From contig NC_043009.1 of assembly GCF_006345805.1 (NCBI RefSeq), positions 69,130,001 to 69,194,000 of the forward strand: a stretch of DNA of 64,000 nt, in the 5' to 3' direction. Source of the stretch: Octopus sinensis. Lineage: Eukaryota. Numbering within the stretch: the first letter of the stretch is position 1; each line of letters opens with the position of its first letter. The position numbers were made by a program, and so were the translations under genes. Below, in pieces: positions 41,602 through 55,840 of the stretch. Below the pieces are notes generated by a model. It saw only the letters and a program-made list of their open reading frames with translations, did no database searches and was not told the origin of the DNA.

Positions 41602-44600
41602 ATGAGACTGTCAATTGCGTTCGTTCTCCTCTGCCTGTCTCTGTGTCAAGCAAAAAACATTTCTTCAGGTAAGAAAACGTAACGCATTTTTTGATTACTT
41701 CAAACATATCTCATTCTTAATAATATTACAGCTGACATGGAGTGAAGAATCCAGGCTTTTGAGCACAAGCGCTTCAAAAGGCTACTACACTTCCCATACA
41801 TCGAGTACATAAGGAACAGCTTCCTCAGGCATCAAGCCGACCAATACTCTGGCAGACAGGAACCGCTCCTTCTGCAGATGAAAAGCTTGCCTGATACAGT
41901 CATGTATCCAGCCACAACTCCCTGTCTAAATCTCTAACATCCACAGCATGGCCATCACTCCTTCATCACCAACCCCACCATTTATACTAACAAAGCAATG
42001 TTTCTATTTCAGATATTGGAGGAATTCTTGAAGGAAGCTGGTCAAGTGAAGAAAATCTGCTGCTTACTTTTAACCAAAGAAATAACTCTTTGAGTGCTAC
42101 ATTAACTATTTCATGTAGCCGTGGATACAATTTTACAGGTAAGTTTTAAGACTCTTTAAGCTTGATCACAAGAGAAAGGAACCAGTCTGCTATTGTATTA
42201 ATTCTGTAGAATTAGAAAGGTTTTTGGAGATTATTGGCATCCCTCTTAAATCTGTCTTTTAACCCTCTTTTATCTTTTACTTCTTTCAGTCATTTAGATT
42301 GTGGCCATGCTGGAGCACGACCTTGAAGAATTTTAGTCAAACACATCAATCCCAGGACTTGTTTTTAGACTTGGTGCTTATTCTATTGATGTCTTTTGCT
42401 GCACTGTTAAGTTACAGAGATGTAAACAAACCAACACCAGCTGTCAAGTGGTGGTAGTGGTGAAGCAAATGCACACACACACACACACTCACACGTGATG
42501 GGCATTTTTTCATTTTTTGCCTACCAAATCAATTCACAAAGTTTTGGTCAGCCCAACATTATAGCAGTGGGACTGAACCTAGAACCATGTGGTTGGGAAG
42601 CAGCCTACTTACCACACAGTCCTGCCTCTGCCTTTCATTAAAGTCAATGTCAATATTGATTTTTCCTGTAAAAACCTCATTCATATATTATAGTGTCAAC
42701 TTTGTCGATGCTTATAGTAAAATCCATGTTAAGTTGAATAGTAAAATCCAATAAGTCAATTACATCAACCCCCAGTGCATAACTGGTACTTACTTCATCA
42801 ACCCTGGAAAAACGAAAGGCAAAATCAACCTCCGCAGAAATGAAGACTTGCTAATGCTCATAGCGAGTTTCTTGTTCATGTTTAAAGGCCAAGATCAAAA
42901 TTTGTATGGAATATGCATGTTACTCAATATAAGAAGTCTTCATCTAAATTACATTTTATTTTATATCTTCGATTTCATGAAGGGATTTATCTGGGGCTTT
43001 TTCCCCCTTTTTCTTTTGTAGGTAACATTACCAACAGCAATACATTTCATCTGTATGGAGCATTCAACACCACGGCCATAGCTGTCACAGGTATTTACCT
43101 TTTCATGAATATGTTTCTTATGAACTCTTTTAATTTTGTTACACAAAATTATGAAGGAAGGAATTTTTTTGCATCTATTTAAGAACTAGCAGTATCGCCC
43201 AGCATTGCTCAGGTTTGTTTTGACCCTTTAGAATTGGAATTTTCGAAAAGTAAAGATTTTGCATTATGTAGCTTGTTATTCTCTTTAAGTGAACATTTTT
43301 CTGGTTGAAATACACTGAAAAATGGCAACACAGCAGTCAAAAAATCGTTGAAAATAGGGATTTTCATAGAAAAAAAAGCACCTTTTTGATGTAAATAATT
43401 TTTGGTCTTAACAAGGTCCGATTTGAATTTTTTCTTCTACAGAATGAAGAGCAAGCCTTCTTCTATCATACTTTCAATTTTGGTCAACTTGTGCCGCAGG
43501 GTCTCGGAGGAGATAGTGTTAGTTGAAGGCTACCAAACCTGCCATACACAGACAACTTCAGCTTTATATATATAGATAAATATTTTATTAGGATAGCATT
43601 TGTATGAAAACACCAGAGATAGTCTCAGAGAGGTTGGTATGAAAAGAGATAAATATTTTGCCATCTATGTCGTCAGACAGACAATTGAAGCCTGGTACAG
43701 CTCTCCTGCCTGCTGGCTCCTGTCAAACTGTCCAACCCATGCCGGCATAGAAAAACAGACGTTAAATGCAGACAATGATGATGATGCTGATGATGTAGTC
43801 TGAGATATGCTTGTGAAAAACAAGCAGATTAGCATGGATGATATGCATGCATTTTGACACTATGTCTCCACAACAGGAGTTCACCTGGGGTTAAACAACA
43901 GCAAGCACACACATGTAGGCATGCTCATGTATAACGATAGATATGTATGACGTATGTATGCACGCATGCATGTATATGTATGCGTGTGTGTGTGTGTAAT
44001 TATATATTCTTTTATTCTTTTACTTGTTTCGGTCATTTGACTGTGGCCATGCTGGAGCACCACCTTTAGTCAAAGAAATCGACCCTAGGACTTATTCTTT
44101 GTAAGCCTAGTACTTATTCTATCAGTCTCTTTTGCTGAACTGCCAAGTTACGGGGACGTAAACACACCAGCATCAGTTGCTAAATGATAGCAGGGAGACA
44201 AAGACACACACAAACACACACACCACACACACACACGCACACACACACACACACACACACACACACACACACACACACACACACACACACATACAACAGG
44301 CTTCTTTCAGTTTCTGTCAACGAAATCCACTCACAAGGCTTTGGTCGGCCCGAGGCTATAGTAGAAGACACTTGCCCAAGGTGCTACACAGTGGGACTGA
44401 ACCCAGAACCATGTGGTTGGTAAGCAAGCTACTTACTGCACAGCCACTTCTGTGCTTATATAGTGTAATTTAAATTTAAATTGTATGACAGGTAACCAGT
44501 ATTAATTTCTCCATATCTATTCCTGTATACCCAAAAGAAAAACAGCAAAGAGGACTCATAGACTCATAGTCAGAGTCTCCTTTGGTTGGATGCTATGGTT

Positions 44601-53600: not shown

Positions 53601-55840
53601 ACTAGCCCAGAAAGAATATAAGAGACATTGTGACAACATAGCAAGGATTGTCCATTGGGCACTTTGCAACAAGTATGGATTTGACAGAGCAAAAAATTGG
53701 TACAAACATAAACCCAAAGGCACCATCGAAAATGATAATGCAAAGATCCTGTGGGATTTTATGATTCAGTGCGACCATGAGATAGAGGGTAGGAAGCCAC
53801 ACATAGTGTTAATTGAGAAAGAAAGCAAACGATGTTGGATAATTCCTCTACAGCATCCCCAGCTGACAAGAAGTTATGTGATAAGGAAGAAAGAAAAGTT
53901 GATAGATATGAGAGGTTAGCTTGGGAGGTTAAGCAGTTGTGGTTGATTAAAAAAGGTGATAGTAGTACCAATAATTGTTGGAGCCCTGGGAACAGTAAAG
54001 TACATGGAACAAATAGGGGCTGCAATAAGAGTGGGGCACTTGCAGACAACAGCACTGCTTGTAACCACTCGAATACTCTGGATGGTGCTTGTAAAATAAA
54101 GGCTTTTACCGTAGTTCACTGGAAGTGAACAACTGGCACTGTAGTACATCTCCAGCATTAGAAGCTGTGAAAAGGTAATAATAATAATAATAATAATAAT
54201 AATAATAATAAATGCCCTGATGCAGTACCAGGCAGTGGCTCTCATGGCTTCTGATCTTAACTGATTGGAAGTGTTATCATGTACGTTGTTTTGTCTTGGT
54301 ATAAAAGATGGGCTACAGCAAATATTCTGCTCAATACCACAGATCTGCTTGTCAGTTGTTTGACCTTAACCAGTTGAGCATGTCCCTTAGTGGCTGACGA
54401 TATGTGCATCTCTGACCACGAGCAGAAGTAGTGGGGGAGCATCATAGCCATGTGTTGAGAGGGATTCTTTGGGGTTTGAATAGTTCACCTCTGGAAACAT
54501 GGGTGGTTCTTTCAACATCCTTAAACAACCCTTATTCAGGGACCGTTTGAGCGGGATGGGCTACTCAACCTGAAGAAAATTCTAACTGGGCCCCACCTGC
54601 AAGGTCATGTGCTGTTTATCTTGATATGAGATCACCATGTCGCGCACATATGGTTGTGATGCATGTGCCTGGTGTACCTTTATCAGACGGGTAGTCATGA
54701 TGGGTATATTGGGCTTCGTAAATTTTACCCCAGTGTCACTTTGATGGCATGCACTGCTCTCTCACATAATAATAATAATAATAATAATAATAATAATAAT
54801 AATAATAATCCTTTCTACTGGAAGCACAAGGTCTCAAATTTGGGGGAAGGAATTAAGTCGATTACATTGACACCAACGCATAACTGGTATTTAGTTAATC
54901 GACCCTGAAAGGATGAAAGGCAAAGTCAACCTCAGTGGAATTTGAACTCAGAACATAGCGGCAGACAAAATACCACTAAGCATTTTGCTTGTCATGCAAA
55001 CGATTCTGCCAAGATATAGGCTAATGGCTGAAGGAGATTGGAATAGAATGCCTGGAAGAGCTCCTACAGAAAGTCTGTCTCTTAAGGACAGCAAGGATTA
55101 TCATAAGAATTCCACGTACTTGAGAGACTGCTGAAAACTTGTGGATACCTAAGGATGCAGGTAGTAACATGCTATCCACATGACTCCTACTCGGAATAAG
55201 ACTAAACCTGAGCCAAACTAAAATTATGATAATAATAAATTTTTCCTTTATTACTCGAAATGACTTTGATAATTTATTTTTTACCAAAATTTCATGAGAG
55301 GTTACAAAGAAAGAAAAGTAAAAAGTGGAATGTGAAAAACAACTTCACAAATGAGGAAACGAAAGATGTATGAAAATAAATTGAAATTTCAAAAAAAAAA
55401 GATAAAACAAAATAATCAAAATGAAAACTAAAACAAGATTGTCTCAAAAGAGTTTCTCTCTGGTCAATCACTCATCAACAAATGTAGCAAAAAGATTTTC
55501 CTACCCTGCATCATTAATCTCATTCTTTTTGCCTCAACACTTTTTACTGGGCACAGTTCCAGTATGGTTTTGTGAATTTTGAGGTTCATTAGGACATGCA
55601 ATTCGTTTGGACCCCTTCTGACCACTTCTCATCGTTTGTTAATCCTGCATCAATCATTCTCCCATAATTCCAACTCAAACTAGCCACAACTCTATGTCAT
55701 TTCCAGTGTTTCTTATCACCATTCTTCTAGTTCTTTCACCCATGTCCTAAGTCACAAATGGATGGATTTATATCTGACAATTTCGGTCTGTGTTTCAGGC
55801 AAAATCTTTAGCTTTGAAGACACAGCAGATACTGCCATAA
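41602..55840 (+). CDS. Secreted, highly diverged avidin-like (calycin beta-barrel) glycoprotein, ~160 aa. Coding exons 41602-41668, 42013-42138, 43022-43090, 52922-53100, 55799-55840
   Basis: All introns are GT-AG with pyrimidine tracts and the phases chain (1,1,1,0). Translation: MRLSIAFVLLCLSLCQAKNISS/DIGGILEGSWSSEENLLLTFNQRNNSLSATLTISCSRGYNFT/GNITNSNTFHLYGAFNTTAIAVT/GQLYKTNQNNKILKITLLKYDYANCTNYTPTKISFHELKPSQNISNSSATQSYYNWYNYL/AKSLALKTQQILP*. It has a hydrophobic signal peptide. LEGSW and TGQLY..KILKITLL align with avidin LTGKW and TGQCF..EVLKTMWLL. An acceptor at 41593 implies an upstream 5'UTR exon. The last exon is the least certain. Confidence 0.8.
43184..43577. mobile_element. Non-autonomous Helentron/HINE-like element in an intron
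   Basis: 5' aactag..tcgcccagcattgctcagg hairpin-like subterminal motif; 3' acagacaacttcagctttatatatatagat. Confidence 0.45.
44008..44450 (-). mobile_element. SINE family A with an internal (CA)n
   Basis: Full-length match to the family. Confidence 0.85.
45380..45985 (-). mobile_element. RTE LINE 3' end
   Basis: Minus-strand GIWGRGRPRKTWDEVVKHGLRTLSLTEAMTKDRDLWRYAV; (CAT)n tail. Confidence 0.85.
47265..47665 (-). mobile_element. SINE family A
   Basis: Diverged full-length copy. Confidence 0.8.
50405..50625. repeat. (GATA)n/(GACA)n microsatellite
   Basis: Seen directly in the sequence. Confidence 0.95.
50634..51487 (+). mobile_element. Internally deleted Tc1/mariner-superfamily DD37D (maT-type) transposon
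   Basis: TA-flanked ends (t/c)agggtg...caccctg. KHPVSIMVFGVITSDG, then QQDSAPCH...WPPNSLDCNPLDY with 37 residues between the last two Asp. Confidence 0.8.
51905..52400 (-). mobile_element. RTE 3'UTR fragment
   Basis: (CAT)n tail, tttccatgctggcatgggttgga, and gtgccaccggca subrepeats. Confidence 0.8.
53205..53385. repeat. (TAA/TGA)n tract
   Basis: Seen directly in the sequence. Confidence 0.95.
53385..54210 (+). mobile_element. R4/Dong-like RLE non-LTR retrotransposon, 3' fragment within (TAA)n
   Basis: WMTKSDLKPEMEALICAA*EQAL, the CCHC-like CRICGQNGETVWDMTSQC, and ILWDFMIQCDHEIEGRKPHIVLIEK. (TAA)n on both sides. Confidence 0.8.
54215..54768. repeat. Unclassified ~550-bp element, full copy
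   Basis: Matches 25105-25610; bounded by (TAA)n. Confidence 0.8.

What the first reader, a model, noticed from the sequence alone, without database searches (positions are those of the whole stretch)
41602..55840. Orphan-looking secreted protein is a pocket-less, hyperglycosylated avidin paralogue
Seen: five phase-compatible exons give a 160-aa signal-peptide protein with 9 N-x-S/T sequons and two Cys in the mature part. It shares two intron positions with the canonical avidin downstream: phase 1 in the D of D-x4-LEG[ST]W, and phase 1 in the G of GQ. Known: chicken avidin binds biotin through N12, S16, Y33, T35, W70, W97, W110 and N118, and W110 also supports the tetramer. Seen: the NDLGS motif and the W70, W97 and W110 equivalents are absent, while alternating beta-strand patterns remain. 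Inference: a neofunctionalised calycin barrel with a different ligand, or a structural or glyco-coat role, which automated annotation would probably call uncharacterised.
Basis: partly seen in the sequence, partly recalled or inferred. Interest (0 to 1): 0.85.

Follow-up and report, generated by a model that had tools for sequence, protein, structure and literature searches.

The report
Hidden avidin-like domain in octopus avidin
The supposed orphan secreted protein is really the sugar-coated first domain of a larger octopus protein that alternates two biotin-binding avidin barrels with two unrecognised barrels predicted to have the avidin fold but lacking the biotin-binding residues.

Summary
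I reproduced the signal peptide, the 9 N-glycosylation sequons, the two Cys and the absence of the biotin-contact residues. The gene model is wrong.

The O. bimaculoides NCBI model LOC106867775 (533 aa) and an Argonauta hians model (536 aa) instead splice exon 4 to a 37-nt linker exon (window 56878-56914). That exon joins directly to the "canonical avidin downstream" (61452-63469). The window therefore encodes the first 277 aa of one secreted protein with the order signal peptide-X1-Avd1-X2-Avd2. It is 91% identical to the O. bimaculoides protein. X2 and Avd2 lie beyond the window.

No sequence method links the X domain to avidin: Pfam, PDB sequence and profile searches, and hhalign (probability about 0.1%) all failed. 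An AlphaFold2 model built only from X sequences gives an 8-stranded meander barrel with core pLDDT about 80. Its 50 best PDB matches are all avidins or streptavidins.

So the avidin-fold idea is supported and the orphan paralogue gene is not. The role of X as a built-in non-binding partner barrel is inference.

The parts
41602..41668 (+). Exon 1: start codon and signal peptide (MRLSIAFVLLCLSLCQA|KNISS). Ends in phase 1.
   Evidence: Matches residues 1-22 of O. bimaculoides P0005. The cleavage site is inferred, not computed.
42013..42138 (+). Exon 2: X1 domain, predicted strands 1-4 (DIGGILEGSW...SCSRGYNFTG). Phase 1 to 1.
43022..43090 (+). Exon 3: X1 strand 5 and the first half of strand 6 (GNITNSNTFHLYGAFNTTAIAVTG). 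Phase 1 to 1.
52922..53100 (+). Exon 4: X1 rest of strand 6, strands 7-8 and an N/S/T-rich tail (GQLYK...HELKPSQNISNSSATQSYYNWYNYL). Phase 1 to 0.
53101..53148 (+). Read-through of the exon-4 donor (VSSIMIFISLIMLMI*). It forms the C-terminus of the UniProt model A0A0L8HYN0 and is probably intron.
   Evidence: 47 of 48 nt are identical to O. bimaculoides, but the flanking non-coding DNA is equally conserved.
53528..56474 (.). 2.9-kb block absent from the orthologous O. bimaculoides intron. It contains dispersed repeats.
55799..55840 (+). Rejected.
   Evidence: It has an AG acceptor and an open frame. It lies in the lineage-specific block and is absent from both orthologous models.
56878..56914 (+). 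True exon 5: a 37-nt linker exon (ADNWSLENFKQE plus the G of the next Asp). Phase 0 to 1, with a TG acceptor and a GC donor.
61452..61538 (+). Exon 6: Avd1 strands 1-2 (DANCSLEGTWYNDLGSTMVIKQNEDGLLEG).
62174..62314 (+). Exon 7: Avd1 middle part (QFRTAVERVNGSS...GIVWNEGTSISSFVG).
63344..63469 (+). Exon 8: Avd1 strands 6-8 (GQCIPSSNNATFLKTQWTMLVGQETFDTSWKAFYNGMNNFYR). Ends in phase 1 at a GT donor. The X2 and Avd2 exons lie beyond the window end.

Best explanation
Window 41602-63469 (+ strand) holds the first eight exons of one gene. The gene encodes a secreted protein of about 533 aa with the order signal peptide - X1 - linker - Avd1 - X2 - linker - Avd2. Avd1 and Avd2 are ordinary avidin barrels and keep the biotin-contact residues, so they probably bind biotin.

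X is an octopod-restricted domain of about 110 residues. It has diverged beyond sequence recognition but is predicted to keep the 8-stranded avidin barrel.

X has lost the Asn12/Ser16/Tyr33/Thr35/Trp70/Trp97/Trp110 equivalents and the Cys4-Cys83 pair. It has gained its own invariant Cys pair, one in the loop after strand 3 and one in the 7-8 loop. These probably form a disulfide across the barrel mouth, next to an invariant N-C-[ST] sequon. X1 is heavily N-glycosylated.

Inferred function: the X barrels act as built-in, non-biotin-binding partner subunits for the Avd barrels. The chain would then form a pseudo-oligomer with two active and two inactive barrels, with X1 carrying the glycans. The likely biological role is extracellular biotin sequestration.

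Shown: the exon structure, the fused architecture in two other species, and the absence of the biotin residues. Predicted: the fold. Inferred: the disulfide, glycosylation, barrel pairing and biological role.
For: - The exhaustive phmmer search with X found only octopod proteins. One of them, A. hians P0002 (536 aa), has the order X-Avd-X-Avd.
- The O. bimaculoides NCBI model P0005 (533 aa) has the same order. Its first 146 residues equal the UniProt short model P0001.
- Pfam finds exactly two Avidin stretches in each long protein.
- The window's eight exons give an open 277-aa frame that is 251/277 identical to P0005.
- Exon 4 ends in phase 0 and the avidin exon starts in phase 1. The linker exon is 37 or 34 nt (1 mod 3) in every copy checked: both repeats of both fetched loci and the window's linker. 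It carries a conserved W or FWD.
- No signal-peptide exon for a separate avidin gene was found in 55841-61451. That scan was restricted to exons ending G|GT.
- Exon-intron structure is conserved between Octopus and Argonauta.
- The AF2 model of X used four X sequences only. It shows 8 meander strands, pLDDT about 80 over residues 10-110 and pTM 0.66. The top 50 Foldseek PDB hits are all avidin family.
- The best hhalign path is co-linear, pairing W15 with W10 and the strand-6 G of X with the G of GQ, although it is not significant.
- The Avd profile matches avidins at E = 1e-19 to 1e-33, with the contact residues aligned.
- There is precedent for a non-biotin-binding avidin-like domain used for oligomerisation in fibropellin (Yanai 2005, cited in PMC10336842). 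Engineered tandem-fused dual-chain avidins also exist (PMC3105096; PDB 2c4i was the top hit).
Against: - There is no significant sequence or profile similarity between X and any avidin. Common descent therefore rests on a predicted fold, on adjacency and on two shared intron positions.
- The AF2 alignment is only four sequences deep and the mean pLDDT is 68. The single-sequence model was unusable.
- The linker exon has a non-canonical TG acceptor (and, in the window and O. bimaculoides linker 1, a GC donor). I could not inspect any RNA-seq data, so the fusion rests on two annotation pipelines.
- dN/dS of X1 between the two Octopus species is about 1.2, from 14 non-synonymous and 3 synonymous changes. 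Avd1 gives 0.25. Recent constraint on X1 is therefore weak or diversifying.
- No structure of the whole chain could be predicted, so the barrel-pairing idea is untested.
Confidence: 0.65

Rival explanations
1. One reading: a stand-alone 160-aa secreted protein from five exons ending at 55840, encoded by a gene separate from the avidin downstream.
For: All five exons have AG/GT boundaries and compatible phases.
Against: Exon 5 lies in a 2.9-kb block absent from O. bimaculoides. Neither orthologous model uses it. It is a 13-codon open frame after an AG, which is easy to find by chance within 8 kb of intron.
Confidence: 0.04
2. A short isoform also exists. Exon 4 is not spliced, for example through intronic polyadenylation. 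This gives a 162-aa protein ending VSSIMIFISLIMLMI, a hydrophobic tail that could be a GPI-attachment signal or a membrane anchor. X1 would then be displayed on the cell surface.
For: The UniProt model A0A0L8HYN0 has this end. The tail is open and 47/48 nt identical in the two species. Ser-rich residues precede the hydrophobic tail, as in GPI signals (my own knowledge).
Against: Non-coding DNA on both sides is equally conserved, so the conservation says nothing about coding. AT-rich introns translate into I/L/F/M-rich peptides by default. The equivalent read-through after X2 gives only about 8 residues before a stop (VSYLIISI*). The sequence is not on record in any assembly searched.
Confidence: 0.12
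3. X is not derived from avidin. It is an unrelated beta domain, for example the Reelin-type domain named by UniProt or another small barrel, which was recruited next to avidin domains.
For: UniProt calls P0001 a 'Reelin domain-containing protein'. No sequence or profile method links X to avidin. The low-confidence model hits lipocalins and FABP-like proteins as well as avidins.
Against: Pfam gives no Reeler hit at E<=10 in three proteins. The better model's 50 top hits are all avidins. X and Avd units share phase-1 boundaries and the strand-6 Gly intron.
Confidence: 0.15
4. X is a neofunctionalised ligand-binding barrel with its own small-molecule or glycan ligand, rather than a passive partner subunit.
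For: Invariant polar residues alternate along strands 1, 7 and 8 in all four X copies across Octopus and Argonauta: W15/S17/E19, Y89/Y91/N93 and K101/S103/H105/E106. This pattern is expected for a lined pocket.
Against: The same pattern fits a conserved interface. The invariant Cys pair and sequon at the barrel mouth may cap it (inference). No ligand can be named.
Confidence: 0.3

Closest known systems
Chicken avidin and other vertebrate avidins (Pfam PF01382; zebavidin, xenavidin, AVRs)
   Same: Avd1 and Avd2 match the family profile (E = 1e-22, and 1e-43 for both together). They keep N12, S16, T35, W70, W97, W110, N118 and the Cys4-Cys83 pair. X shares the predicted 8-stranded barrel.
   Different: Known avidins are single-domain chains that assemble into homotetramers or dimers. 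Here four barrels sit in one chain and every second one is degenerate. Octopus Avd1 has Phe at the Tyr33 position.
Avidin-like C-terminal domain of sea-urchin fibropellins (Yanai et al. 2005, Protein Sci 14:417, as cited in PMC10336842)
   Same: An avidin-fold domain in an extracellular invertebrate protein that does not bind biotin and is used for assembly.
   Different: According to that citation the fibropellin domain is recognisably avidin-like, and it follows EGF repeats. X is not detectable by sequence and alternates with active avidin domains.
Engineered dual-chain and single-chain avidins (PMC3105096, PMC3029397; PDB 2c4i)
   Same: Several avidin barrels are fused in one polypeptide, so that sites with different properties sit in one pseudo-tetramer.
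   Different: The engineered forms needed circular permutation and are man-made. Here the barrels keep their native order and are joined by a linker of about 40 residues (X to Avd) and one of about 7 residues (Avd to X). Whether they form a pseudo-tetramer is unknown.
Bacterial dimeric avidins (rhizavidin, shwanavidin, hoefavidin)
   Same: They are among the best structural matches to X. They carry a loop-to-loop disulfide near the barrel mouth (my own knowledge), as inferred for X.
   Different: They bind biotin tightly and have the contact residues. X does not have those residues.

Membership tests
Avidin family (PF01382) - X1 domain (41602-53100) | Significant match to the family sequence profile | tested here: not met
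   No Pfam hit at E<=10. hhalign against cephalopod, chicken and streptavidin profiles gives probability 0.08-0.14%. The PDB profile search finds no avidin. Positive control: Avd profile against streptavidin gives probability 96.9%.
Avidin family (PF01382) - X1 domain | 8-stranded antiparallel up-and-down beta-barrel of the avidin type | tested here: met
   The AF2 model has 8 meander strands, core pLDDT about 80 and pTM 0.66. The top 50 Foldseek PDB hits are all avidins or streptavidins, with TM 0.5-0.69. This is a prediction, not a solved structure.
Avidin family (PF01382) - X1 domain | Biotin-contact residues N12, S16, Y33, T35, W70, W97, W110, N118 | tested here: not met
   In the strand-registered alignment these positions are S, L, L, I, F or gap, gap, and absent. 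Only the structural W10 equivalent is kept. The alignment is approximate.
Avidin family (PF01382) - X1 domain | Cys4-Cys83 disulfide | tested here: not met
   There is no Cys before strand 1 or after the strand-6 Gly. A different invariant pair is present instead, C40 and C94 in mature numbering.
Avidin family (PF01382) - X1 domain | Shared intron positions with the neighbouring avidin unit | tested here: inconclusive
   Two of three positions are shared: phase 1 before strand 1 and phase 1 in the strand-6 Gly. The third differs, lying after G48 in X and after G30 in Avd. Phase-1 boundaries are common in secreted multidomain proteins.
Avidin family (PF01382) - X1 domain | Biotin binding and oligomeric assembly | not testable with these tools
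   Needs recombinant protein.
Avidin family (PF01382) - Avd1 domain (61452-63469) | Profile match and contact residues | tested here: met
   PF01382 E = 1.8e-22 over model positions 1-115 of 116. N12, S16, T35, W70, W97, W110 and N118 are kept and Y33 is replaced by F.
Reeler / Reelin domain (PF02014; the UniProt name of P0001) | Profile match, or a beta-sandwich fold of the reeler type | tested here: not met
   No Pfam Reeler hit at E<=10 for the window protein, P0001, P0002 or P0005. No reeler structure appears among the top 50 fold matches. The PROSITE profile itself could not be run.
GPI-anchored or tail-anchored surface protein | A C-terminal hydrophobic signal that is part of the mature transcript | tested here: inconclusive
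   The tail exists only if the exon-4 donor is not used. Its conservation is no higher than that of the flanking intron.

The most novel reading that the evidence does not exclude
Octopods have evolved a natural single-chain pseudo-tetrameric avidin. Four avidin-fold barrels in one polypeptide fold onto each other. Two barrels stay active for biotin. The other two (X) have been turned into glycosylated, disulfide-capped dummy subunits that have diverged beyond sequence recognition. This would be nature's counterpart of the engineered dual-chain and single-chain avidins. Its gene would also use conserved TG 3' splice sites.
Probability: 0.3. Interest if true: 0.7.

Novelty: new variant of a known kind. 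Interest (0 to 1): 0.5.

Why it matters
Avidins are known as single-barrel chains that form homo-oligomers. A natural chain that alternates active and degenerate avidin-fold barrels would show how an obligate homo-oligomer becomes a single-chain hetero-assembly. It would also offer a native scaffold with fixed 2:2 valency for biotin technology.

The case adds a domain family that Pfam does not model and that UniProt currently names, apparently wrongly, as a Reelin domain.

The conserved TG acceptor of the linker exons is a rare case of a constitutive non-AG 3' splice site that can be tested by RNA-seq.

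Tried and rejected
- Pfam, PDB-sequence phmmer and PDB profile searches with X gave no avidin. The only PDB hits were spurious RCC1-repeat matches at E about 0.04.
- hhalign of the X alignment against avidin alignments, in local, global and low-mact modes, was not significant.
- Single-sequence AF2 gave pLDDT 44. 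Its fold search returned only insignificant mixed calycin and avidin hits, so I did not use it.
I used the O. bimaculoides orthologue instead.
- The word-indexed homologue search with Avd1 returned nothing. This was a false negative, because P0005 holds a 94% identical domain.
- P0003 and P0004 are repeat proteins and unrelated.
- A scan for a separate signal-peptide exon for the avidin, restricted to exons ending G|GT, found nothing convincing.
- tblastn found no further X or avidin copies in the window.
- The exact look-up of the read-through protein and of P0001 in assemblies found nothing.
- Literature searches for octopus or cephalopod avidins, and for the two LOC identifiers, found no description of this gene.
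- My first dN/dS run used a wrong exon-2 coordinate and was corrected.

Full report
**What is in the window.** The window is AT-rich, repeat-rich animal DNA. Its closest match is Octopus bimaculoides, at about 87-93% nucleotide identity even in introns.

All have AG/GT boundaries. Together they give 160 aa with nine N-x-S/T sequons and Cys57/Cys112 after a typical signal peptide. Nine sequons in the mature domain is about twice what its own composition predicts (4.5 +/- 1.7, P about 0.012).

Downstream, exons 61452-61538, 62174-62314 and 63344-63469 encode a clear avidin domain (Pfam PF01382, E = 1.8e-22). Both units begin with a phase-1 intron in the Asp before LEG[ST]W. Both have a phase-1 intron in the Gly of GQ.

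**The gene model is different.**
- The only database relative of the 160-aa protein was UniProt A0A0L8HYN0 of O. bimaculoides (P0001, 161 aa, 82% identical). It is named "Reelin domain-containing protein".
- An exhaustive phmmer search of 1.84 billion representatives found one further true relative, P0002 of Argonauta hians (536 aa). In P0002 the domain, which I call X, occurs twice and alternates with two canonical avidin domains.
- Searching with P0002 returned the NCBI model "uncharacterized protein LOC106867775" of O. bimaculoides (P0005, 533 aa). Its order is signal peptide-X1-Avd1-X2-Avd2, and its first 146 residues are identical to P0001.
- tblastn of P0005 against the window found, between exon 4 and the avidin exons, a 37-nt linker exon at 56878-56914. 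It encodes ADNWSLENFKQE; O. bimaculoides has ADMWSFENFKQE.
- With this exon the eight window exons form one open 277-codon frame. It is 251/277 identical to P0005 and ends in phase 1 at a GT donor. X2 and Avd2 must lie beyond position 64000.

Several points support the fusion:
- Exon 4 ends in phase 0 and the avidin exon starts in phase 1, so a bridging exon of length 1 mod 3 is required. The linker is 37 or 34 nt in every copy checked: both repeats of both fetched loci and the window's linker.
- The linker peptide keeps a W or FWD motif between paralogous repeats and between Octopus and Argonauta.
- The complete exon-intron structure is conserved between the two genera.
- I found no credible separate signal-peptide exon for the avidin. 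That scan was restricted to exons ending G|GT.

This 2.9-kb block contains dispersed repeats, and O. bimaculoides has only about 15 bp at the same place.

The hydrophobic read-through tail of the UniProt model is 47/48 nt identical between the species. The surrounding non-coding DNA is just as conserved. The conservation therefore does not argue for coding, and a short isoform can be neither shown nor excluded.

**Is X an avidin?** By sequence, no.
- Pfam gives nothing at E<=10 for four proteins.
- PDB sequence and profile searches give no avidin.
- hhalign of a four-sequence X alignment (A2) against cephalopod avidin domains gives probability 0.08%. Adding chicken avidin and streptavidin gives 0.14%.
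- The same avidin profile finds streptavidin with probability 96.9%.

Other X copies read FARIW, LLGNW or FSSSW, and GL instead of GQ.

By predicted structure, yes.
- An AlphaFold2 model of O. bimaculoides X1, built from an alignment of X sequences only, has eight meander strands. pLDDT is about 80 over residues 10-110 and pTM is 0.66.
- Its 50 best Foldseek matches among 350,542 PDB chains are all avidin-family proteins, including hoefavidin, zebavidin, streptavidin, shwanavidin, avidin, AVR4, rhizavidin and bradavidin 2. Probability is 1.00, E is about 1e-3 and TM reaches 0.69.
- The best, non-significant hhalign path is co-linear with this picture. It pairs X Trp15 with avidin Trp10, and the strand-6 Gly of X, which carries the shared intron, with the Gly of GQ.
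- In that register the biotin contacts N12, S16, Y33, T35, W70 and W97 are replaced or deleted. The W110 loop is different and the Cys4-Cys83 pair is missing.
- X has its own invariant pair, Cys40 and Cys94 in mature numbering. Judging from the strand boundaries, these sit in the 3-4 and 7-8 loops at the open end of the barrel, next to an invariant N-C-[ST] sequon. A mouth-spanning disulfide is my inference.

No Reeler signal was seen in the Pfam or fold searches.

**How it probably works.**
- Shown: a secreted chain with two avidin domains that keep the biotin-binding residues. Octopus Avd1 has Phe for Tyr33; Avd2 and both Argonauta domains keep Tyr.
- Predicted: two interleaved avidin-fold barrels without those residues.
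- Inferred: the X barrels serve as built-in, non-binding partner subunits, and X1 carries a dense glycan coat. The chain would then form a pseudo-oligomer with two active sites, and the protein would sequester biotin outside the cell as egg-white avidin does.

There are precedents. The fibropellin avidin-like domain does not bind biotin and mediates oligomerisation (Yanai 2005, cited in PMC10336842). Engineered dual-chain avidins also exist (PMC3105096).

An alternative is that X binds a ligand of its own. Invariant polar residues alternate on strands 1, 7 and 8.

Between the two Octopus species X1 has dN/dS of about 1.2, from 14 non-synonymous and 3 synonymous changes. Avd1 has 0.25. The counts are small, but X1 seems to evolve under relaxed or diversifying selection, although 23 positions are invariant among the four X copies of O. 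bimaculoides and A. hians.

**Novelty.**
- NCBI already predicts the gene as an uncharacterised protein, and its avidin domains are recognised.
- The papers searched contain no description of it.
- What is new is the reading of X as a cryptic avidin-fold domain, the alternating active/degenerate four-barrel architecture, and its apparent restriction to octopods. One search found relatives only in Octopus and Argonauta at single-sequence sensitivity.
- I rate it a new variant of a known kind with moderate interest.

**Limits.**
- I had no transcript data.
- The AF2 alignment had four sequences and no full-length prediction was possible.
- Homology of X to avidin rests on the predicted fold and on context.

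Noticed in passing
window 56876-56916; L001 15309-15349 and 29297-29334; L002 14332-14372 and 23999-24036: The intron before the linker exon ends in TG, not AG. This holds in the window, in both O. bimaculoides linker exons and in A. hians linker 1. A. hians linker 2 has a canonical AG at the equivalent position. The window and O. bimaculoides linker 1 also use a GC donor (AAG|GCAAGT). TG 3' splice sites are known in humans as rare alternative acceptors (PMC2374985). An in-frame canonical AG lies 21 nt inside the window's linker exon (56897-56898) and would give a product 7 aa shorter.
   Followed up: partly
window 57852-58897 (-), 59940-60611 (+), 62661-62972 (-): There are decayed Mos1/mariner-type transposase remnants in the introns of the gene. 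The Mos1 HTH domain PF17906 scores E = 2e-21 at 58712-58897. Two further copies give weaker HTH_48 and DDE_3 matches.
   Followed up: partly
window 53528-56474, repeat core 54766-55011: This 2.9-kb block is absent from the orthologous O. bimaculoides intron. It contains a SINE-like unit of about 200-250 bp with about 20 diverged copies elsewhere in the window, and copies elsewhere in L001.
   Followed up: yes
window 62174-62190 (Avd1, GQFRT): Octopus Avd1 has Phe at the position of the biotin-contacting Tyr33, in both the window and O. bimaculoides. Avd2 and both A. hians avidin domains keep Tyr. This may mean the two sites have unequal affinity.
   Followed up: no
window 41653-53100 versus L001 10052-14604: The X1 coding sequence shows only 3 synonymous but 14 non-synonymous differences between the two Octopus species (dS 0.04, dN/dS about 1.2). 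Avd1 has dS 0.13 and dN/dS 0.25. The introns flanking exon 4 are also unusually conserved, at about 97%.
   Followed up: partly
P0001 (UniProt A0A0L8HYN0): The source name 'Reelin domain-containing protein' could not be reproduced. Pfam gives no Reeler match and the fold search shows no reeler-like structure. The entry is also a truncation of the 533-aa NCBI model.
   Followed up: yes
(tool behaviour): The word-indexed protein search with the window's Avd1 domain returned no hit, although P0005 in the same database contains a 94% identical domain. Negative results from that tool should be treated with caution.
   Followed up: yes
A2 and A3 alignments: X and Avd copies are about as similar between repeats within a species as between species. 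Examples are ObX1-ObX2 50% against ObX1-AhX1 40%, and ObA1-ObA2 61% against ObA1-AhA1 56%. The X-Avd unit duplication is either close to the Octopus/Argonauta split or has been homogenised by gene conversion.
   Followed up: no
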